This document shows, in pieces, positions 327 to 58,086 of a stretch of 64,000 nucleotides of DNA. The stretch spans positions 310,001 to 374,000 of IMG/VR virus record IMGVR_UViG_3300029922_000001. One strand, 5' to 3'. Within the stretch, counting starts at the first letter, position 1, and each line of letters begins with the position of its first letter. A model generated the notes under the pieces. That model was not told where the DNA came from and searched no databases. It worked only from the letters and a program-made list of their open reading frames with translations. Both the position numbers and the translations under genes were made by a program.

Positions 327-740
327 ATGGTTATAGCTTCGGTAGAACATAATTTTATTATACATTTCGTGAACTCAATGTGGTATGCTGTTTTTATGAT
401 CTTAACTGATATCGAAATTTATAGTTGTTGTATTTTTGGACAAAATTATACATTTATTGAACACTCCAAAAAGAATATTAAATTATGGAAACAACTTCTC
501 GTTGCTTTATCTGAAAGAAATATTCGTTTTGAAATTAATTCATCTGAAGGTAATGATAAATACAATGATGACTGTTATTGTTTTCTTAATGATTATAAAA
601 CTACAATTTATGTGTTAGATAATTACAGTATTTGCTATCCTTTGATGGATGGAGAATCATGTGATTGGGAAATCGGATCATTTAAGAAATTAATGAATTT
701 TATTGATAATTTTAAAGATCATCCAGCTAGAAAGATTTGA
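327..740 (+). CDS. hypothetical phage protein
   Basis: 137-aa ORF; true start uncertain. Confidence 0.5.
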   Translation: MVIASVEHNFIIHFVNSMWYAVFMILTDIEIYSCCIFGQNYTFIEHSKKNIKLWKQLLVALSERNIRFEINSSEGNDKYNDDCYCFLNDYKTTIYVLDNYSICYPLMDGESCDWEIGSFKKLMNFIDNFKDHPARKI

Positions 741-762
741 TCTAAGGTATACTGTTTTCATT

Positions 763-1899
763 ATGAAACGAATCGGAGAATTTCCACAAAAAGAAGAAGT
801 GCTTAAGCTATTGAGGACGACTGAAAAATCGCTTGTTTGTAAACTTGGTGTCGATCCTACAGCAACTGAGGTTACTTTGGGGTGGGCTGTCGTTTTACGC
901 GAACTAAAGCGTTTACAAGTGTGTGGTCACAGTATCACATTAATTATTGGCGATTTTACGGCTGGCATTGGTGATCCTACAGGTAAGAGCAAAACTCGTG
1001 TACCATTGACACACCAACAAATTAATGATAATGTCAATGCGTTATTACCACAGATTTTTACTATTTTAGATCCTACAAAGACTTCTGTTAAGTTTAATTC
1101 TGATTGGTTGGCTTGTAAGTCATTTGCTGAAATGATGCGTATTATGGCAAATATTACTGTTCAACAAGCTTTGAATCGTAATGACTTCCAGAATCGTTTA
1201 GAAGACAATGCACCCGTAGGATTACATGAAATTATGTACCCTGTTTGTCAGGCTTTGGATTCGGTACATATTTGGGCAGATATTGAAATTGGTGGAGAAG
1301 ATCAATTATTTAATGTTATGATGGGTAGAGATTTAATGAAGCAAATGGGTATGAAACCTCAGTTGCCGTTACTTTTCCCATTGCTTTTAGGTGTTGACGG
1401 TACGCATAAAATGAGCCAAAGTCTTGGTAATTTTATTAGTATTCGTGATACTCCTGAAGATATGTTTGGTAAAACGATGTCGATTCCAGATAGTGCTATG
1501 CCTAACTGGTTCCATTTGCTTACTGATATTTCTTTTGAGTCTGCACAGAAGGAAAATCCTAGAGATACTAAATTAATTTTGGCTGAAGAGATTGTACGTC
1601 AATTCCACGGATTTGAAGCAGCAACTTTGGCAAAAATTAATTTCATCAATAGGTTTACTCATAAGATTGTAATGCCTACTGAAATTCTGGGTTTTTCTAG
1701 AGAGGATGCAAATGAATCTTGGATGACAATTCTTGAAGAAGCTTTACCAGGAGAAAGCAAGAATAACCTTAAAAGATTGGTTCAACATAAGGGAGTGAGG
1801 TTGAACGGTACACCAATTGAGAGTGTGAAGGATTTCCCAGAGGAAGGGATTTTGACAATTGGGAAACTAAGAGCGTGGAAAGTAGAGAGTTACGATTAA
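763..1899 (+). CDS. tyrS: tyrosyl-tRNA synthetase (class I) with atypical HIGH motif
   Basis: LGVDPTA..TLGW (HIGH position), IGDFTAGIGDPTGKS.TR, YPVCQALDS, EIGGEDQLFN, GVDGTHKMSQSLGN (KMSKS-like), short S4-like tail; ATG at 763 follows AGGTATACT. Confidence 0.95.
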   Translation: MKRIGEFPQKEEVLKLLRTTEKSLVCKLGVDPTATEVTLGWAVVLRELKRLQVCGHSITLIIGDFTAGIGDPTGKSKTRVPLTHQQINDNVNALLPQIFTILDPTKTSVKFNSDWLACKSFAEMMRIMANITVQQALNRNDFQNRLEDNAPVGLHEIMYPVCQALDSVHIWADIEIGGEDQLFNVMMGRDLMKQMGMKPQLPLLFPLLLGVDGTHKMSQSLGNFISIRDTPEDMFGKTMSIPDSAMPNWFHLLTDISFESAQKENPRDTKLILAEEIVRQFHGFEAATLAKINFINRFTHKIVMPTEILGFSREDANESWMTILEEALPGESKNNLKRLVQHKGVRLNGTPIESVKDFPEEGILTIGKLRAWKVESYD

Positions 1900-6744: not shown

Positions 6745-6758
6745 ATGATGGGTATAAT
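6745..6758 (+). promoter_or_regulatory. -10 box (TGGGTATAAT) driving ncRNA locus A
   Basis: TATAAT at 6753-6758, 5-6 nt before the tRNA-like unit. Confidence 0.7.
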
Positions 6759-6763
6759 ATATT

Positions 6764-6840
6764 TGCGGTTTAGAGTTCTAGTGAACTCACAAGTTTCATA
6801 AGCTTGTCCAGAATAGTGCGATTCTATTAACACGCACCCA
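6764..6840 (+). tRNA. deviant tRNA-like RNA, anticodon CAT, encoded CCA
   Basis: cloverleaf TGCGGTT-TA-GAGT(TCTAGTGA)ACTC-A-CAAGT(TTCATAA)GCTTG-TCCAG-AATAG(TGCGATT)CTATT-AACACGCA-C-CCA; bulged acceptor stem, no D-loop GG, T-loop TGC. Confidence 0.6.
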
Positions 6841-6849
6841 CGAGACTTG

Positions 6850-6914
6850 CTCTGAGAAAACCTGGTTAAAATTCGGTTTTCAGTTAGAAAATCTTTAAAG
6901 AATAGGACTCAGAG
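6850..6914 (+). ncRNA. tRNA-sized multi-arm RNA unit, possibly a degenerate tRNA
   Basis: 7-bp closing stem CTCTGAG/CTCAGAG with internal hairpin AAAACC/GGTTTT; CGAGA at 6919. Confidence 0.4.
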
Positions 6915-6918
6915 ATTG

Positions 6919-7181
6919 CGAGAATTTTATTTAGCAGTAATCAGGCTTAGTGTTGTTGAATCCTGAACAACATGAAAAGAATAAAAGATCGAATAAAGAT
7001 ACTCGTAAGAGTTGAGGGTTTCTAGCTTCCCCCAAAAAGTCTAGAGGACGAGAATTTATTCAGCAGTAGTTAAGCTAGTTTTGAGCGAATGGATCAAAAT
7101 GAAAAGAATAAACGATCATTAAGATACTTGCAAGAGTTGAGGGTTTTCTGGCTTTTCCCGCATAAAAGTTAAGGGACGAGA
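6919..7181 (+). ncRNA. two tandem ~130-nt structured RNA repeats
   Basis: shared blocks AGCAGTA.T.A.GCT, ATGAAAAGAATAAA.GATC, GATACT.G.AAGAGTTGAGGGTTT, GGACGAGA; stems differ in sequence but keep pairing. Confidence 0.7.
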
Positions 7182-7216
7182 GTTTTGTGTTTGTGTTTGT
7201 ATTTATATTGAATTGA

Positions 7217-7250
7217 AAGCCTTTGGAATTTTCCAAAGGCTTCTTTTTAT
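7217..7250 (+). terminator. intrinsic terminator of ncRNA locus A
   Basis: AAGCCTTTGGAA-TT-TTCCAAAGGCTT hairpin followed by a T-tract. Confidence 0.8.
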
Positions 7251-26290: not shown

Positions 26291-27346
26291 ATGGCATGGT
26301 ATCGCAAAGCAAATACTGGGATTCAACAATTTCAAAATCCGAAGGAATTGTTAATGAACTATAGGCGAAAGGGTTCTGAAATGTTACCCGAATTGATAGA
26401 GTTCGTATCTAAACACTACGGAACTTCACCAGAAGAAGCTAAAAATATAATTTCTGAAAAAACTTTACCTATAGAAGTTATTCAGCAATTTATGAAATAT
26501 ATGCACCATGTTGAACATCCTCTATTGAAGCCTTCATACAATAGTCAACAATATTCAGATATTGCTGGTGCTTATTTAAATACTAGACGTTCCAAAAATG
26601 AAATGCAAGCATATATCTTGTTAGGTTTACCAGGTTCTGGTAAATCTACATATGCTGATGCTGCTGGATTGATTGATCCTAATAAAATTGGAGGATTAGA
26701 AATAGATGTTGATTTATTTAAACCATATAGCCATAAATATTCTCAAGGATATGGATCTTCTTTAGCTCATCCTGATAGTATGGCTTTAGGTGATGTTGCA
26801 CTTACCCAAGCGGCTAATAAAGGTAGTAATTTAGTTTTACCACTAGTTGGAGCTAACGCTAATTATATTGAAGGTGTTATTCATCATTTAAAGAAATTAG
26901 GCTACAACGTTCATATTAAATATTTACATTTAGATCACAATAATGCTGTAAACAGAGCAAAAGAAAGATATGAAACAACAAAGCGTTATGTACCATTAGA
27001 GTATATTAGTGGTATTGCAAATCAGCCTTTTGAAACTTATAATAAGATGAAAAATTTAAACAATGCGGATTCTTTTGAAGATTTGAATGCGCTTGATGTT
27101 GCAAAACAAAGACCACACAGACGACAGAATGAAATATATGAATCAGATACACCATTGTTTGTGACGGCACAAGTGGAAAACAATAGAGATAAAAAAGATA
27201 ACAATGAAGTAATTTTAGAATATCCCTTTAATGAATTTGAGGAATGGGAAGAAACAGTATTAAACTCTTTAAAAAATGCACATCAATTGCTGGAATTTAA
27301 AAAGAGATATCCATACATGCTTCCCTCTAAAGATATGAAGAACTAA
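26291..27346 (+). CDS. zeta-toxin-like P-loop kinase with WY leader
   Basis: MAWYRKA; LLGLPGSGKST, IDVDLFK, LKKLGYNV, RAKERYETTKRYVP. Confidence 0.8.
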   Translation: MAWYRKANTGIQQFQNPKELLMNYRRKGSEMLPELIEFVSKHYGTSPEEAKNIISEKTLPIEVIQQFMKYMHHVEHPLLKPSYNSQQYSDIAGAYLNTRRSKNEMQAYILLGLPGSGKSTYADAAGLIDPNKIGGLEIDVDLFKPYSHKYSQGYGSSLAHPDSMALGDVALTQAANKGSNLVLPLVGANANYIEGVIHHLKKLGYNVHIKYLHLDHNNAVNRAKERYETTKRYVPLEYISGIANQPFETYNKMKNLNNADSFEDLNALDVAKQRPHRRQNEIYESDTPLFVTAQVENNRDKKDNNEVILEYPFNEFEEWEETVLNSLKNAHQLLEFKKRYPYMLPSKDMKN

Positions 27347-43601: not shown

Positions 43602-43672
43602 GTCTTAGAAGCATTTTGGTGATGCAAGGGACTCTAAATCCCTATAACGGAGTTCGAATCTCCGCTAAGACG
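43602..43672 (+). tRNA. amber suppressor tRNA (anticodon CTA)
   Basis: GTCTTAG-AA-GCAT(TTTGGTG)ATGC-A-AGGGA(CTCTAAA)TCCCT-ATAA-CGGAG(TTCGAAT)CTCCG-CTAAGAC-G; no encoded CCA. Confidence 0.9.
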
Positions 43673-43682
43673 CGAGAAAAAT

Positions 43683-43850
43683 ATGAAAAAACTCACAAAA
43701 AAAGAAAATGCTATTTTTGATGCAGCATGGGATGAAGGCTATGAAGCCTATCATAAAGCTGTGTTACGTGAAAATAATCCTCATATTGTTTTAGTGGCAA
43801 ATGATGGTTGGGATGAAGGTTGGGAAATTGCATGGGAAGATGATCAATAA
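43683..43850 (+). CDS. Rmf-like miniprotein (55 aa)
   Basis: WDEGYEAY...NNPH...GWDEGW..AW. Confidence 0.55.
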   Translation: MKKLTKKENAIFDAAWDEGYEAYHKAVLRENNPHIVLVANDGWDEGWEIAWEDDQ

Positions 43851-43867
43851 GGTGTATAATAACGATA

Positions 43868-44095
43868 ATGAAGAAAATGAAGAAAATTCAAGCTAAATAT
43901 GTTACCGTGTGGGATAGTGGACTAAGGATTTCTGCAAACTGTGAAATTGATATTTCAGTAAGACCAGTGCGCTTAATGAGCGTAGAATCAGTTTATAATC
44001 CAGATATTCAAGCTGGTAATATTATTGAAGAATATATTACACACCACGAATATGATCCAGAATATGTTCCAGTATATAGGGAATGGGAAGTTTAA
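43868..44095 (+). CDS. hypothetical protein
   Basis: Y.TVWDSG motif. Confidence 0.65.
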   Translation: MKKMKKIQAKYVTVWDSGLRISANCEIDISVRPVRLMSVESVYNPDIQAGNIIEEYITHHEYDPEYVPVYREWEV

Positions 44096-44133
44096 ACTTC
44101 CCCAACGAGAAAATTTGAGGTATACTTGTTCAC

Positions 44134-44367
44134 ATGAAGAATTATTATAGCTCTGAAAAAATCAACGAAAGAATTAATGAAAGAACTAAGATTTATGATT
44201 TGCTTGCAGAAGTAATTGGAAAACCTAGTTTTCTTAATGAATTGCAAAAAAGATATCCCAATGTTGATTGGAACCAAGTACAATATGATGATGGTCAAAC
44301 TAGTTTAATGCACGTTCAGAATGATATTGAACATTTAAATATTGACGCGACAATTTACTACCCATAA
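44134..44367 (+). CDS. hypothetical protein
   Basis: class II promoter. Confidence 0.7.
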   Translation: MKNYYSSEKINERINERTKIYDLLAEVIGKPSFLNELQKRYPNVDWNQVQYDDGQTSLMHVQNDIEHLNIDATIYYP

Positions 44368-44368
44368 T

Positions 44369-44989
44369 ATGCTATATACATTTGATAAAGAATACACATT
44401 CTCCATTACAGACGCTGAAATCAAGCGTTGTGAAGAATTCGCAGATGCTTCTACAAACGACTATTGGAAGCGCAACCAAACTGATTCAGATCGAATCAAA
44501 CAACAGATTGTTTTCGGAAAACTAGGAGAGCTAGTTGCCGCTAAGTTCCTTGTACGACATTTGAAACAACCTGTTATGGAACCAGACTTCCGCATTTACA
44601 CTAGAGATACCAAAAGTTGGGATGCGGACTTCCCCTATAAGTCATTAGGACTTGGAAATAAGAATTTCCATGTTAAGGCTTATGCTCCAAGTGATAAACC
44701 AGAATCATGGGCATTTCAATTTAAGAACAAGAGTGGCAACGGTGGAACCGATAAGCTATTTGAGAACTTCCCAGAACATAAGAAGGATTGTGTTATCTGT
44801 GTTTTGGTTGATGTAGATAATAAAAAGGGCTACATCAGAGTATTGGCTAATTGGGGAGACTTGCATTATCTTCTACGTGATCCAATATCTTATCAATTGA
44901 GAGGATTGAAGAAGTTCCTTTATTATGAGGACCTTATCAATCTCAAGAACGAAGAAAAAGATAGTGAAAAATCTGATTCAGAAGCTTGA
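44369..44989 (+). CDS. conserved phage protein, possible PD-(D/E)XK fold
   Basis: GKLGELVA, PDF.IY, WDADF, HVKA. Confidence 0.6.
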   Translation: MLYTFDKEYTFSITDAEIKRCEEFADASTNDYWKRNQTDSDRIKQQIVFGKLGELVAAKFLVRHLKQPVMEPDFRIYTRDTKSWDADFPYKSLGLGNKNFHVKAYAPSDKPESWAFQFKNKSGNGGTDKLFENFPEHKKDCVICVLVDVDNKKGYIRVLANWGDLHYLLRDPISYQLRGLKKFLYYEDLINLKNEEKDSEKSDSEA

Positions 44990-45014
44990 CAAAGACTAGG
45001 AAGATGGGTATAAT
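44986..45014 (+). promoter_or_regulatory. consensus sigma70 promoter
   Basis: TTGACA-17-TATAAT. Confidence 0.85.
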
Positions 45015-45019
45015 GAATA

Positions 45020-45590
45020 CGTTGCAGGGTTGAGAGACTGTAGCTGGAGCCTCCTAAAAAGGTTTGGTTGGATTCCTTGTAAAAATCCAACATGAAACCG
45101 AGAGGAATGACCCATAACTTAGCAGACCTCTTTCTAGCGGGGGTTCTCGAAAAAGCTAGAAACCGAGGGGCTGTTCGATTTCAGCGATTGTAACCTTTCT
45201 TAGTAGGATTCTCGAAAACTAAGAACCGAGAAGGTGTATTAATGGCTTCTTTCCTGGTAGAAGTTCTCGAAAAACTAGGAACCGAGAGTTGATTTTAAGT
45301 TCAATCATTGCCTTGCTTGTTGGGTTCTCGAAAAAACAAGCTCCTTCCGAGATAGATCGTCTAACGATCACGCAGAAAAATAGTGGGGTGTTCTCGGACT
45401 CCAGGTACCAACTATGAAGTATGAAGTAAAGTAAACGAAAAATAATTGTCCCATGAGATTGGGTTGACCAACTCCGCAAGTTTAAGCGACTGATTAACTA
45501 TGCGTAAAAGTAAAAAGTGCAAATATTATAAATGGCGTAAGTAGTTTATTTTGCGAATTTTCCTCAGAAATGAGGGAAAACGAGAAAATA
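45020..45590 (+). ncRNA. ncRNA locus C with repeated TTCTCGAAA-loop hairpins or pseudoknots
   Basis: four units near 45128-45170, 45193-45235, 45245-45290 and 45312-45352, plus a fifth GTTCTCG loop near 45390; no credible ORF. Confidence 0.7.
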
Positions 45591-45607
45591 TGATGGTATA
45601 ATAAGTT

Positions 45608-46636
45608 ATACAAAAGAACATTGAAAATTGAATATGAGCCGCGCTCAATAAATATCGGAAAAGAACGGTAAAATTGAAGTTTAGTAAATTTAAATCCGTC
45701 ACCTAATCAGGTAAAAACATGAAAGTAAATAGATAATACGGAAATCATTAACTGCTTAGTCAGTTACTATCATTAAGGGGAAAGAAAGAATAAGATAGTC
45801 CACCGACGCGATACATATTAAAGTAGGGTACGAAATAGAAATATGAACGTATCTTGGAATTAATTTTCCAACGAGATTTGTTGAAAAACAAAATAGGGAT
45901 GGGATAGACCGAATAAACGCTTTTGGAGTCTGCAACAGTAGTTGTGACGATGAATTAAGAAGTTAGAAATAATAGTTCACTGGGCACCCATGCGAATTAA
46001 GGATGTCAAGATCGGGAAGGTGGCAAACTTCCCTTGCGAGATGTTAGAAATACTATAAAAGTACACCAACTTAGTTGTGGAAAATTAATTAATTCTAGCA
46101 CTCCGAGATTTATTAGGTGGCAAAACCGCAATATTTATAAGTTGCGTACCTAGCTGTAGGGTGATAGCCTATCCGTTTTTATAGGGTAAACATACAGTCT
46201 AATGAATCTCTAAATTGAAAACTGAATATGGAATAACACTCGCTCTAGAGCTATCGGCTTTTAAACAACCTGGTGCCAAAATAAAGTAACGGCTATAACT
46301 ATATAGTTAGTTTTCGAATTATAGTGAAAGGAATTAATATTCCTAACGAGATTTATATGATCGCAGATTCCGCTTGCAAACATAGTTGGTTTCGGGAGCG
46401 ACGTTAATGGGTATATCCCACGAGATTTTTACAGACTGTTTGATTGGATTATCTAACAAAACATAAAGAACATCAACACTAAACCGCAAAAGAAAGAGTC
46501 ATGTACTACCATGAACGCTTTTGCATTTTTACCATTCTGTTATTTGTTTGTAAGAATCTTCTGGAGCAATTGTAGTAGTTGCTTGGTTATTGTATCCCTT
46601 TCATTTCAATTTGCCCTACCCACAAGGTGGGGCAAA
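45608..46636 (+). ncRNA. large (~1 kb) ncRNA locus D
   Basis: own TGGTATAAT (-10 near 45597), boxA-like elements at 45616 and 46214, many hairpins, five hairpin-CGAGA ends, terminal hairpin 46610-46636. Confidence 0.65.
46610..46636 (+). terminator. terminator-like hairpin
   Basis: TTTGCCCTACC-CACAA-GGTGGGGCAAA. Confidence 0.6.
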
Positions 46637-56925: not shown

Positions 56926-58086
56926 ATGGAAGAATTTACAGAAGAAATTAATGAAACATCTAGAAAATTAGCTAGTATTCAAAGGATTTTAGCCTTGGAA
57001 CCAATTCCAGGTGCGGATCGTATTGAAACAGCTACAATTTTGGGATGGAAGGTCGTAGTAGAAAAAGGAAAGTATAGAGTTGGGCAATTAGTTGTATACG
57101 CTGAAATCGACAGTTTATTCCCTGCTAGACCTGAATATGAATTTCTTTCTAAGACTGGTTATCGTATCAAAACCATTCGATTAAAACAGCAGGTAAGCCA
57201 AGGCATTGTATTTCCATTGTCAGTTTTAAAGTGGAATGATAACATCAAAATTATTGGTGACGAAGTGTTGGATGATAATTATGATTACATTAATGATATG
57301 TGGAATGAAGAATCGCCTTTGCTATTACTTCAAGATATGAATAATGATTCAAATCCTGCTATTTTTCTTGCTGAAGGAACTGATGTTACTGAATGGATTG
57401 GTGTAACCAAATATGAACCAGTTGTACCTGCACAATTACGGGGAGTAGCTAGAGGTGGTTTTCCAAGTTGGTTGCATAAGACGGATGAATGTCGGATTCA
57501 GGCTATTCCTGATTTATTAGAAAGACACATTGGTACAACGATTAGAGGACACGAAAAGCTCGACGGCAGTAGTTGTACTATGTATATTCGCAATGGTGAT
57601 TTTGGAGTATGTTCTAGAAATTTGAATTTAAAGCACACTGAAGGTAATAGTTTCTGGGAAATAGCTATGAAGTTCCAAGTTGAAGCCATGATGAAACATT
57701 GTTTCCCAGATTATAATTTTGCAATCCAAGGCGAACTAATCGGTCCTGGCATTCAAGGTAACAAATATAATCTTAGAGAAACAACGATTAGATTGTTTAA
57801 TGTGTTTGATATTGATAAAGATGAATACTTGCATGATCTTGAATCAAAGTATGTTGCTCAACAATTAGGTTTAGAGTGGTGTCCTTGGGTGATGGATTAT
57901 GTTATTACTGAAAACACCACAGTTGAAGAACTATTGTTGTTAGCGCAAGGTCCATCGGCTTTAAATCCTAACCAGGAAAGAGAGGGGTTGGTTTGGCGAC
58001 CATTAGTTGAGTCTAAAGATGATAAAATCGGAAGATTTTCCTTTAAGACTATTTCTAATAAGTTCTTGCTAAAAAACGGAGAGTAA
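56926..58086 (+). CDS. ATP-dependent RNA ligase, DRB0094 family
   Basis: N-terminal OB LASIQRI..LEPIPGADRIE; KTDECRIQ, HEKLDGSS, VCSRN, QGELIGPGIQGN.Y, REGLV, SFKTISNKFLLK. Confidence 0.92.
   Translation: MEEFTEEINETSRKLASIQRILALEPIPGADRIETATILGWKVVVEKGKYRVGQLVVYAEIDSLFPARPEYEFLSKTGYRIKTIRLKQQVSQGIVFPLSVLKWNDNIKIIGDEVLDDNYDYINDMWNEESPLLLLQDMNNDSNPAIFLAEGTDVTEWIGVTKYEPVVPAQLRGVARGGFPSWLHKTDECRIQAIPDLLERHIGTTIRGHEKLDGSSCTMYIRNGDFGVCSRNLNLKHTEGNSFWEIAMKFQVEAMMKHCFPDYNFAIQGELIGPGIQGNKYNLRETTIRLFNVFDIDKDEYLHDLESKYVAQQLGLEWCPWVMDYVITENTTVEELLLLAQGPSALNPNQEREGLVWRPLVESKDDKIGRFSFKTISNKFLLKNGE

What the first reader, a model, noticed from the sequence alone, without database searches (positions are those of the whole stretch)
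45061..45415. Array of four to six hairpins with an invariant TTCTCGAAA loop, each able to form an H-type pseudoknot
Seen: stems vary but stay paired (TTTCTAGC/GCTAGAAA, TCTTAG/CTAAGA, TTCCTGG/CTAGGAA, GCTTGT/ACAAGC). Loops keep TTCTCGAAA, and each stem is followed by CCGAG(GG/AA/AG/AT), which pairs 5-6 bp with its own loop. In units 1-3 the same CGAG can alternatively pair with the 5' flank (CCTC, CCTT), suggesting a two-state fold. A T-loop-like GCTG-TTCGATTT-CAGC lies between units 1 and 2. The array is driven by a perfect TTGACA-17-TATAAT promoter. Inference: a multivalent protein sponge (for example an anti-defence decoy) or a nuclease-resistant RNA. Tandem pseudoknot repeats are also the architecture of type III toxin-antitoxin antitoxins.
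Basis: partly seen in the sequence, partly recalled or inferred. Interest (0 to 1): 0.75.

Follow-up and report, generated by a model that had tools for sequence, protein, structure and literature searches.

The report
tRNA-end-mimicking hairpin array in phage RNA operon
A 441-kb peat phage has a tandem array of small RNA hairpins, each ending in the same short motif that follows nearly all of its tRNA genes, so the hairpins probably act as mini tRNA-end mimics in a punctuated stable-RNA operon and not as a toxin-antitoxin-like sponge.

Summary
Four canonical hairpins (plus degenerate units 0 and 5) have covarying 7-8 bp stems and an invariant TTCTCGAAA loop. They lie behind a perfect sigma-70 promoter in a 1.5-kb non-coding gap of a 441-kb phage.

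The main correction is that the CCGAG "tail" is not special to the array. (C)CGAGA directly follows 23 of 24 tRNAs in this genome, five uncalled tRNA-like ends, and terminal hairpins of other non-coding modules. It is a punctuation motif specific to this phage lineage, and each unit ends in stem-A-C-CGAGA like the phage's tRNAs.

A different helix, between the 5' flank and the purine run at the start of the loop, is in register. Together with the main stem it gives a canonical H-type knot about 10-13 bp long, the size of a tRNA acceptor/T minihelix.

Strains gain and lose whole units. Metatranscriptome contigs cover only the longer downstream modules. No ToxN gene was found and no Rfam family matches.

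Best reading: the units are tRNA-end mimics cut out or bound by the phage's tRNA 3'-end machinery. Their function is unproven.

The parts
44986..45014 (+). Perfect sigma-70-type promoter TTGACA-17-TATAAT, overlapping the 3' end of ORF 44342-44989. The predicted transcription start is about 45021.
   Evidence: 12/12 match. One of only six perfect copies in 441 kb, all on the + strand; three lie just upstream of tRNA clusters. Conserved in L170, L171, L172 and L433.
45061..45103 (+). Unit 0: a hairpin without the loop motif, followed by CCGAGA (45098-45103).
45127..45169 (+). Unit 1: 5' flank CCTC, stem 45131-45138/45155-45162, loop 45139-45154 containing TTCTCGAAA (45144-45152), tail C-CGAGG (45163-45168).
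   Evidence: This unit is absent from strain L433.
45170..45185 (+). Small spacer hairpin GCTG/CAGC with a T-loop-like TTCGATTT loop.
   Evidence: Spacers after units 1, 3 and 4 in the window, and after unit 0 and units 2a, 2b, 3 and 4 in L433, each hold a small hairpin.
45192..45234 (+). Unit 2: stem 45197-45204/45218-45225, TTCTCGAAA 45209-45217, tail CCGAGAAGG 45226-45234.
   Evidence: Duplicated as units 2a and 2b in L433.
45244..45289 (+). Unit 3: stem 45251-45258/45274-45281 (contains a G.U pair), TTCTCGAAA 45264-45272, tail CCGAGAG 45282-45288.
45311..45353 (+). Unit 4: stem 45315-45321/45335-45341, TTCTCGAAA 45325-45333, 5-nt linker, tail CCGAGAT 45347-45353.
45381..45416 (+). Unit 5 (degenerate): stem TGGGGT/ACTCCA with loop GTTCTCGG, nested inside an ATAGT/ACTAT hairpin. 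It has no tail of its own.
45348..45585 (+). Long 3' module of the first transcript, from the CGAGA of unit 4 to the next ACGAGA (45580-45585). It contains the only part of this transcript seen in RNA libraries (45361-45521).
   Evidence: contigs from four independent metatranscriptomes, two of them with identical ends at 45361 and 45520. CGAGA positions.
45594..45876 (+). Second promoter (TGgTATAAT, 45594-45602) and a conserved structured RNA ending in ACGAGA (45871-45876).
   Evidence: RNA contigs at 45622-45811. Alignment with L170 3548-3790 shows covarying helices. Only a weak cow-rumen-1 match (E 2.2).
45877..46510 (+). Further non-coding modules, each closed by hairpin + (A/C)CGAGA. CGAGA starts at 46037, 46104, 46347 and 46421.
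   Evidence: There is no open frame under any stop-codon reassignment. Whole modules are inserted or deleted in L433.
44342..44989 (+). Upstream gene for a PD-(D/E)xK-like nuclease-fold protein. It is syntenic with the RNA locus in all relatives found.
   Evidence: Invariant E63, D82, D96 and K112 in 60 homologues. No Pfam family matches. AlphaFold pLDDT 92.7, with weak fold matches to the restriction endonucleases NhoI, PvuII and NaeI.

Best explanation
The array is the 5' part of a polycistronic stable-RNA operon. It is transcribed by the host RNA polymerase from a consensus promoter of the kind that also stands before this phage's tRNA clusters.

Each unit imitates the end of one of the phage's own tRNAs. 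A 7-8 bp stem is followed by A-C-CGAGA, the same junction (discriminator, optional C or CCA, then CGAGA) that follows 23 of 24 tRNAs in the genome.

The pyrimidine 5' flank pairs in register with the purine run at the start of the loop. Together with the main stem this gives a canonical H-type pseudoknot. Its two stacked helices add up to about 10-13 bp, the length of a tRNA acceptor/T-arm minihelix. In this fold the invariant UUCUCGAAAA is the long loop 3 lying along the first helix.

Inferred mechanism:
- The still unidentified activity that forms tRNA 3' ends just upstream of CGAGA also binds or cuts these units.
- Cutting would release modules of 56-65 nt and a longer 3' RNA of about 230 nt, or the units would occupy that activity as decoy substrates.
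- The loop's UUCUCG is an exact antisense copy of CGAGAA. Each site can therefore switch between a presented state (stem plus free CGAGA) and a masked state (UUCUCG:CGAGRR helix). By nearest-neighbour energies the two states are about equal in four of six units.

Shown: the anatomy, the genome-wide motif, stem covariation, unit turnover between strains, and RNA from the downstream modules.

Inferred: cleavage at CGAGA, which fold actually forms, and the decoy or regulatory role.
For: - Motif at tRNA ends: CGAGA starts within a few nt of the 3' end of 23 of 24 tRNAs, against a chance of 0.0018 per tRNA. It also follows 5 uncalled T-arm/acceptor ends.
- Motif distribution: 75 of 180 genomic copies lie in the 12% of the genome outside long frames. 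Of those, 64% are preceded by a stem scoring at least 6 (base pairs, G.U counted as half), against 28% at random positions.
- Same junction: units 1-3 carry stem-A-C-CGAG, the same junction as tRNA-Tyr, Lys, Sup and Gln.
- Promoter class: six perfect promoters, all on the + strand, three of them before tRNA clusters.
- Main stem: 0 of 5000 shuffles reach the observed complementarity, and there are compensatory changes.
- Flank-to-loop helix: in-register pair total 30, against a mean of 19.8 when partners are swapped (1.5% of swaps reach 30), 8-19 when the register is slid, and 0 of 20000 flank shuffles.
- Bistability: state energies are within about 2 kcal/mol in U2, U3, U4 and L171-B.
- Conservation: the loop and tail motifs are kept in L171, whose flanking protein is only 62% identical.
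- Turnover: whole units are gained and lost at CCGAG boundaries in strain L433, whose flanks are otherwise identical.
- RNA: contigs from four metatranscriptomes start 9-19 nt after the last array CGAGA and cover only modules of 230 nt or more. This is as expected if the roughly 60-nt pieces are lost in standard libraries.
- Specificity: no other IMG/VR phage contig or GTDB genome fetched uses this trailer systematically.
Against: - No RNA end has been mapped at CGAGA. The contig starts (45361-45371) are 9-19 nt downstream of the motif, and contigs show presence only, not absence.
- Two downstream modules of 160 and 238 nt are also uncovered in the RNA runs, so fragment size alone does not explain the coverage.
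- The enzyme is unknown. The phage has no detectable RNase Z-like or CCA-adding gene.
- The units lack tRNA-type 5' ends.
- The flank-to-loop helix is short (3-8 bp) and rests partly on pyrimidine/purine composition. Loop 1 of that knot would be 0 nt unless the terminal U-A pairs open.
- Folding energies are not better than shuffles.
- Relative L170 has the operon but no units, so the array is dispensable there.
- Only 8 distinct units from 3 phage strains were available.
Confidence: 0.5

Rival explanations
1. Each unit is a self-contained H-type pseudoknot (main stem plus the loop pairing with its own CCGAG tail). The tandem knots form a multivalent sponge or decoy for a protein, for example an anti-defence decoy, or a nuclease-resistant RNA.
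For: - UUCUCG and CGAGRR are complementary over 5-6 nt in every unit, with duplex energies of -5.9 to -6.9 kcal/mol.
- An 11-nt loop is invariant across units and conserved in L171, as expected for a binding site.
- Copy number varies between strains, as in sponge RNAs.
Against: - Only 0-2 nt connect the stem to the tail, yet that linker would have to cross a 7-8 bp helix.
- There is no covariation, because both partners are invariant.
- The tail is a genome-wide tRNA trailer motif.
- No RNA contig covers the units, although neighbouring segments are seen in four runs.
- No candidate binding protein is known.
Confidence: 0.15
2. The loops act in trans. Four to five exposed UUCUCG loops base-pair with the CGAGA(A) trailers of the phage's tRNA and other stable-RNA precursors. 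They would guide, delay or protect 3'-end processing, acting as an antisense regulator or guide for the phage's own RNA maturation.
For: - The conserved loop contains the exact reverse complement of the trailer hexamer. The chance that a 10-nt motif holds a given 6-mer is about 0.001.
- Both motifs are strictly conserved in the same genome and in L171.
- The trailer motif is lineage-specific, which implies a dedicated recognition partner.
Against: - A 6-bp duplex is weak on its own.
- Complementarity does not extend beyond the hexamer.
- L170 keeps CGAGA motifs in this operon without any such loops on the 6.8-kb contig available.
- Pairing in cis with the adjacent tail explains the complementarity equally well.
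Confidence: 0.12
3. The units are evolutionary by-products. They are duplicated processing-site spacers, or decayed tRNA-derived modules, of a recombination-prone RNA cassette locus, and the loop has no function of its own.
For: - Whole units and whole modules come and go between otherwise near-identical strains.
- L170 lacks units.
- Units 0 and 5 and L171-A are degenerate.
Against: - The loop core is invariant in 7 of 8 distinct units, while the stems diverge with compensatory changes.
- The loop core is kept in a phage whose flanking protein is only 62% identical. This pattern indicates purifying selection on the loop and on the pairing.
Confidence: 0.12
4. The array is a type III toxin-antitoxin antitoxin, or a pseudo-antitoxin that neutralises a host ToxN/AbiQ-type abortive-infection toxin.
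For: It is a tandem structured RNA repeat behind a strong promoter in a phage. Phage pseudo-ToxI escape from ToxIN is established knowledge.
Against: - The units are 55-65 nt long and only 67-75% alike. They are not near-identical 36-45 nt repeats.
- No ToxN-family hit was found in the genome, although the control genomes also did not ring.
- Neighbouring ORFs carry no such domain.
- The downstream sequence is more non-coding RNA.
- The conserved tail is explained by the tRNA trailer motif.
Confidence: 0.02
5. The repeats act at the DNA level, as iterons, an origin of replication, or operator sites for a dimeric protein (TTCTCG-N12-14-CGAGAA inverted repeats).
For: The interleaved inverted repeats have a regular 55-65 bp spacing.
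Against: - Variable stems that stay complementary through compensatory changes and a + strand-only G.U pair point to selection on a folded transcript.
- The position directly behind a consensus promoter inside a stable-RNA operon also points to RNA.
- CGAGA tracks tRNA 3' ends on whichever strand the tRNA lies.
Confidence: 0.03

Closest known systems
tRNA acceptor/T-arm minihelix and viral tRNA-like structures with a pseudoknotted acceptor arm (for example the TYMV TLS; from established knowledge, not tested here)
   Same: A stacked helix of about 12 bp, built here from a pseudoknot, is followed by a discriminator-like A and C(C). The junction is identical to that of the phage's own tRNAs.
   Different: - There is no T-loop, no anticodon domain and no evidence of CCA addition or aminoacylation.
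- It is a bacteriophage element, not a plant-virus 3' end.
- The units are arranged in tandem, 4-5 per transcript.
- They are followed by a lineage-specific CGAGA trailer.
Stable RNAs co-transcribed with the phage T4 tRNA cluster (species 1 and 2, rnaC/rnaD; from established knowledge)
   Same: Non-tRNA small RNAs sit in a tRNA-type operon, are matured by tRNA-type processing, and have long had no known function.
   Different: - Here the tRNAs lie elsewhere in the genome.
- The modules are repeated hairpins with an invariant loop.
- A strict sequence motif marks every 3' junction.
tRNA-like processing signals that release neighbouring RNAs (mitochondrial tRNA punctuation, MALAT1 mascRNA, MHV68 TMERs; from established knowledge)
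   Same: A tRNA-like element is used as a cutting signal within a polycistronic transcript.
   Different: Those systems rely on cloverleaf recognition by RNase P and RNase Z. This one adds a conserved 5-nt trailer, and its minimal hairpin or knot is far smaller than a tRNA.
Type III antitoxin RNAs (ToxI, CptI, TenpI)
   Same: Tandem structured RNA units behind a strong promoter, with pseudoknots proposed.
   Different: The units are longer and divergent. No cognate toxin gene is present and there is no terminator-toxin arrangement.
Protein-sponge sRNAs with repeated hairpin loops (CsrB/RsmZ)
   Same: Several hairpins present the same loop motif, and copy number is variable.
   Different: The loops do not carry the GGA motif (only 1 of 4 contains GGA). 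The motif is instead complementary to the genome's own RNA punctuation signal.
CRISPR pre-crRNA hairpin repeats cut by Cas6-type enzymes; TIGR arrays
   Same: A hairpin followed by a cut site is repeated along one transcript, and units are gained and lost between strains.
   Different: Here the conserved parts are the loop and tail while the stems vary, the reverse of CRISPR repeats. No Nop-domain gene was found and no identical repeats.

Membership tests
Type III toxin-antitoxin antitoxin (ToxI/CptI/TenpI) | Near-identical tandem direct repeats of about 36-45 nt | tested here: not met
   Unit spacing is 65, 55 and 61 nt, and identity to the reference unit is 67-75%. The stems differ between units.
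Type III toxin-antitoxin antitoxin (ToxI/CptI/TenpI) | A ToxN/CptN/TenpN-type endoribonuclease gene immediately downstream, separated from the repeats by a terminator | tested here: not met
   The downstream 1.1 kb is non-coding. Eight flanking ORFs show no such Pfam domain. PF13958 was not found in the 441-kb genome, but the control genomes also did not ring, so that search alone is weak.
Type III toxin-antitoxin antitoxin (ToxI/CptI/TenpI) | Repeats are cut by, and neutralise, the cognate toxin | not testable with these tools
   Needs co-expression and cleavage assays.
   The linker between the stem's 3' strand and CGAG is 0-2 nt in units 1-3 and L171-B, while the stem is 7-8 bp. This is a geometric argument, not a computed model.
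   The loop UUCUCG is invariant. Tail positions 5-6 are purines in 9 of 10 cases, which is compatible with pairing to UU but not compensatory.
Alternative H-type pseudoknot (5' flank:loop purine run + main stem) | Two crossing helices, both supported by sequence variation, with feasible loop lengths | tested here: inconclusive
   The main stem is strongly supported. The flank helix is in register in 6 of 7 distinct units that were scored; only 1.5% of partner swaps and 0 of 20000 flank shuffles reach the observed total. Loop 3 is 8-12 nt and loop 2 is 0 nt. Loop 1 is 0 nt unless the terminal U-A pairs open. No probing data exist.
tRNA-type stable-RNA operon module (unit ending like the phage's tRNAs) | Same 3' junction as the genome's tRNAs (helix, discriminator, optional C, CGAGA) | tested here: met
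   23 of 24 tRNAs carry this junction. Units 1-3 carry A-C-CGAG(A/G), and unit 4 carries it after a 5-nt linker.
tRNA-type stable-RNA operon module (unit ending like the phage's tRNAs) | Promoter of the class that drives tRNA clusters | tested here: met
   There are six perfect TTGACA-N16-18-TATAAT sites in the genome, all on the + strand. Those at genome positions 7122, 171848 and 389264 precede tRNA clusters, and 354986 is this one.
tRNA-type stable-RNA operon module (unit ending like the phage's tRNAs) | Endonucleolytic release at the junction | not testable with these tools
   Only assembled RNA contigs were available. They begin after the last array motif but do not map ends.
Any curated RNA family (Rfam 15) | Covariance-model match at or near the gathering score | tested here: not met
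   In the window only two tRNAs reach the gathering score. In 44800-46600 nothing scores better than E 2.2.
CsrA/RsmA-type sponge RNA | GGA motifs in most hairpin loops | tested here: not met
   Only the unit 2 loop (AGGAUUCUCG...) contains GGA.
CRISPR or TIGR array | Identical repeats with variable spacers, and an associated Cas or Nop-domain (Tas) gene | tested here: not met
   The repeats are not identical and the variable parts are self-complementary stems. PF01798 is absent from the genome, with the controls positive.

The most novel reading that the evidence does not exclude
This phage lineage runs its own RNA punctuation system. A strict CGAGA signal after every tRNA and many other stable or messenger RNA ends is read by a dedicated, still unknown factor. 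The hairpin array is the RNA component of that system, presenting several antisense copies (UUCUCG) of the signal that guide, gate or titrate 3'-end formation. That would make it an RNA-guided or RNA-buffered tRNA maturation system encoded by a virus.
Probability: 0.15. Interest if true: 0.85.

Novelty: new variant of a known kind. Interest (0 to 1): 0.62.

Why it matters
If the reading holds, a huge phage marks the 3' end of essentially all its tRNAs, and of many other RNAs, with one five-base signal. That signal is not used systematically in any other phage contig or bacterial genome fetched in the scans made here. It implies a specific, unidentified RNA-end-forming activity.

The hairpin units would be natural minimal substrates or decoys for that activity, which makes it directly assayable with a 45-nt RNA. 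Their loops, being the exact antisense of the signal, suggest built-in regulation of processing.

A compact "hairpin plus five bases" processing signal with a cognate factor could also be useful as an RNA-processing tool, in the way Csy4 sites are. Even in the most ordinary case, the locus shows that huge phages carry dynamic, cassette-like operons of small structured RNAs beyond tRNAs.

Tried and rejected
- Rfam, at gathering thresholds and at E up to 10, found nothing relevant.
- blastn of the gap and tblastn of a 1028-aa neighbour against GenBank phages found no match.
- Pattern scans for one or two units were run three times on IMG/VR and once on the metagenome collection. They returned only chance matches in coding sequence, screened by script.
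- A pattern taken from the conserved downstream RNA found nothing in IMG/VR.
- The flanking proteins have no IMG/VR relatives, and the 141-aa downstream protein has none anywhere.
- Alternative genetic codes were checked and rejected. The gap has many copies of all three stops in all six frames, and reassigning TAG or TGA adds no frames of 500 codons or more genome-wide.
- The genome has no match to ToxN, Nop, CCA-adding enzyme or RNase Z-like (Lactamase_B_2) families.
- A T-arm + CGAGA pattern across IMG/VR and 185,579 species genomes gave single, chance-level hits. No lineage uses the motif systematically.
- The first structure prediction of the flank protein, from 4 sequences, was too poor to use (pLDDT 50.7). 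The second, from 60 sequences, was confident but gave only weak restriction-endonuclease-like fold matches.
- Two literature searches returned nothing relevant.
- Considered and rejected by inspection: CsrA sponge, CRISPR/Racr repeats, self-cleaving ribozyme cores (hammerhead, pistol), anticodon-loop decoys (the loops are 13-16 nt, not 7), and a NusB/S10 boxA mimic (a similarity recalled from memory only, not tested).
Full report
**Context.** The window is bases 310001-374000 of a single-contig 441,498-bp IMG/VR virus record (33.9% G+C). The DNA is found in peat and permafrost metagenomes. The genome carries 24 tRNA genes, two of them with a CUA anticodon, and a tmRNA. Stop-codon statistics give no sign of a changed genetic code. 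The finding lies in a 1.5-kb stretch (44990-46510) with many copies of all three stop codons in every frame. Upstream is a 215-aa PD-(D/E)xK-like protein gene and downstream a 141-aa ORF.

**Checking the observation.**
- The promoter at 44986-45014 is a perfect TTGACA-17-TATAAT.
- TTCTCGAAA occurs four times (45144, 45209, 45264, 45325). There are no other + strand copies in the window or in the genome.
- Each motif lies in a 13-16 nt loop closed by a 7-8 bp stem. The stems differ between units yet stay complementary, and no shuffle in 5000 reaches the observed complementarity.
- Units 2 and 3 differ by one fully compensatory change (T-A to C-G) and one change to a G.U pair that pairs only in the + strand transcript.
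- CCGAG follows each stem, and a fifth copy follows a motif-less hairpin (unit 0).
- A sixth, degenerate hairpin (unit 5) has the loop GTTCTCGG and no tail.
- Thermodynamic folding is unremarkable (z about 0), so the case rests on conservation and covariation, not on stability.

**Main new result: the tail is a genome-wide motif.** In this phage CGAGA begins within a few bases of the 3' end of 23 of the 24 tRNAs. It comes directly after the discriminator base, after discriminator + C, or after an encoded CCA. The 24th tRNA has CCGAG. The chance expectation is 0.0018 per tRNA.
- Five further T-arm/acceptor-like ends that ARAGORN did not call carry the motif too.
- Of 180 genomic copies, 75 lie in the 12% of the genome outside long open frames. 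Of those, 64% are preceded within 0-3 nt by a stem scoring at least 6, against 28% at random positions.
- The motif also closes the other modules of this gap (CGAGA starts at 45581, 45872, 46037, 46104, 46347, 46421). It occurs in a second non-coding locus in the window (6841-7177) and after terminal hairpins at mRNA ends, for example at 44084-44110.
- Units 1-3 end in stem-A-C-CGAG, the same junction as tRNA-Tyr, Lys, Sup and Gln.
- The six perfect consensus promoters in the genome are all on the + strand, and three stand just upstream of tRNA clusters.
- The array is therefore part of a punctuated stable-RNA operon. Its "tail" is best read as the phage's general 3'-end signal.
- A scan for T-arm + CGAGA in IMG/VR and in one genome for each of 185,579 species returned only single, chance-level hits. 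The signal appears to be specific to this lineage.

**Relatives.**
- Close homologues of the flanking nuclease-like protein led to two short Logan contigs.
  - L171 (62% protein identity) has the same promoter and two units. One is canonical, with the stem followed directly by CGAGAG. The other is degenerate.
  - L170 (63% identity) has the promoter but no units. It keeps a homologue of the downstream RNA (window 45603-45871), whose helices covary.
- A homologue of the downstream glycosylase gene led to L433, a strain whose flanks are essentially identical to the window.
  - There unit 1 is missing and unit 2 is present twice.
  - Spacers differ by whole small hairpins, and later modules of the gap are inserted or deleted.
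  - The breakpoints lie at the CCGAG boundaries.
- The array therefore turns over unit by unit, while the loop core stays invariant in 7 of 8 distinct units.

**Transcription.** Four independent metatranscriptomes hold contigs at 99+% identity for 45361-45521 and 45622-45811 only.
- Two runs give the same 160-nt piece. One insert is flanked by adapters on both sides.
- Nothing covers the four units, the first 340 nt of the predicted transcript, or the modules beyond 45811.
- Contigs show presence, not absence, and have no strand.
- The pattern fits a precursor cut at CGAGA into 56-65 nt pieces, which standard libraries lose, plus a 3' module of about 230 nt.
- It argues against the array being the stable, abundant product.
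- It does not prove cleavage. The contig starts lie 9-19 nt after the motif.

**Which fold?** Three helices are possible in each unit.
1. The main stem is well supported.
2. The loop UUCUCG pairing with a CGAGRR tail is complementary over 6 nt (-5.9 to -6.9 kcal/mol), but both partners are invariant.
   - If the partner is the unit's own tail, only 0-2 nt are left to cross a 7-8 bp stem. By standard pseudoknot geometry that is unfavourable.
   - The upstream tail would be a feasible partner. There are five tails and five loops, staggered so that a tail comes first and a loop last.
3. The pyrimidine 5' flank (CCUC, CCU, CUUCU, CCCUU) pairs in register with the purine run that opens the loop (GGGG, AGG, AGAAG, AGGAG, GAGGG).
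   - The in-register pair total is 30. Swapped partners average 19.8, and 1.5% of swaps reach 30. Slid registers give 8-19, and 0 of 20000 flank shuffles reach 30.
   - Helix 3 together with the main stem is a canonical H-type knot: loop 2 is 0 nt, and loop 3 is the conserved UUCUCGAAAA at 8-12 nt.
   - Loop 1 is 0 nt, or 1-2 nt if the terminal U-A pairs open.
   - The two stacked helices total 10-13 bp, close to the 12 bp of a tRNA acceptor/T-arm minihelix, and are followed by A-C-CGAGA.

Alternatively, helices 3 and 2 can form two nested hairpins that mask the motif. This state lies within about 2 kcal/mol of the main-stem state in four of six units. The data cannot choose between these folds.

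**Interpretation.** The explanation I favour (confidence 0.5) is that the units are tRNA-end mimics. They would be recognised, and probably cut just upstream of CGAGA, by the same unidentified activity that matures the phage's tRNAs. The loop's antisense copy of the motif would allow each site to be masked or presented.
- The units could be released as small RNAs, serve as decoy substrates that buffer the processing activity, or time the release of the downstream RNA. Which of these applies is inference.
- The phage encodes no recognisable RNase Z-like or CCA-adding enzyme. The factor is therefore either a host enzyme or a novel phage protein.
- The window does encode a class I aminoacyl-tRNA synthetase, an RNA ligase and a zeta-toxin-like kinase domain. 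The phage thus invests heavily in tRNA biology.

**Rivals.**
- A trans-acting antisense role of the loops on tRNA trailers is the most novel reading still open.
- The array could be a neutral by-product, but the invariant loop and compensated stems speak against that.
- Type III antitoxin membership fails on repeat length and identity and on the lack of a toxin gene.
- A DNA-level role is contradicted by the strand-specific wobble pair and by the motif following tRNA orientation.

**Verdict.** The feature is real and RNA-level, and it sits in an unusual setting. I file it as a new variant of a known kind: tRNA-type processing modules in a phage stable-RNA operon. A lineage-specific punctuation motif and its antisense loop are the parts that are new. 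Interest 0.62.

Noticed in passing
whole genome (G000); in the window at 43673, 44106, 49485 and at the sites listed under parts: (C)CGAGA follows 23 of 24 tRNAs directly after the discriminator, discriminator + C, or CCA. An AU-rich spacer usually comes next, ending in AU just before the next tRNA. The motif also separates tRNA-Sup (43602-43673) from the ORF that starts at 43684.
   Followed up: yes
window 6746-7240: A second non-coding operon. A GGGTATAAT promoter-like site is followed by modules that each end in CGAGA (6841, 6919, 7049, 7177). Two of them are paralogous units of about 125 nt. A classical intrinsic terminator closes the operon at about 7215-7245.
   Followed up: partly
window 45603-45871; L170 3548-3790; L433 7065-7340: A conserved structured RNA of about 260 nt lies behind an extended -10 promoter. 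Its helices covary between phages, and it is present in four metatranscriptomes. Its only Rfam resemblance is a sub-threshold cow-rumen-1 match (E 2.2).
   Followed up: partly
genome positions 8064, 274914, 275008, 275404, 389561 (outside the window): T-arm plus acceptor-like ends followed by CGAGA that ARAGORN did not call. They are probably additional unusual or interrupted tRNA-like genes.
   Followed up: no
window 43602-43673 and genome 172128-172200: Two tRNAs with a CUA anticodon (amber suppressor type), although long-frame statistics give no sign that TAG is reassigned.
   Followed up: partly
window 703-1899, 26291-27346, 56926-58086: A class I (Tyr/Trp-type) aminoacyl-tRNA synthetase, a zeta-toxin-like kinase domain protein and an RNA ligase with a PHA02142 OB-fold domain. 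Together they may form a tRNA charging and repair kit.
   Followed up: no
window 44084-44125; genome 387000-387030: A G+C-rich hairpin without a U-run, then CGAGA, then AAAT and a GAGGTATACT-type promoter-like site. It looks like a combined RNA-end and restart signal between genes.
   Followed up: no
window 44342-44989: The upstream protein belongs to an unnamed family of about 200-aa PD-(D/E)xK-like proteins (742 representatives at E up to 0.001, no Pfam model). It has invariant E, D, D and K residues and only weak fold matches to type II restriction endonucleases.
   Followed up: partly
window 45399-45416 and 46381-46398: An 18-nt, 83% complementary long-range inverted repeat links unit 5 with a later module of the gap. 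The later site resembles the 5' arm of unit 5.
   Followed up: no
L054 6700-7600 (IMG/VR contig of 104,657 bp): An unrelated phage contig with a tandem array of repeats of about 120 nt that contain CTCTCGAAA(A)AGTCT hairpins and a GTTAAATTCGAGCAC motif. It is a different repeated RNA-like array, found by chance.
   Followed up: no
L207, L272, L185, L228, L247, L274 (soil metagenome contigs): A recurring conserved hairpin, CTTCGG-...AAATTCTCGATACTCGTA-TCGAAG, followed by AACGAGAAG in several soil contigs. Its nature is unknown.
   Followed up: no
run X14, contig laid at window 44843-44965: A relative that is 91% identical over the 3' part of the nuclease-like gene, which then diverges into a CCCACGAC...GTCGTGGG hairpin in place of the promoter and array.
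   Followed up: no
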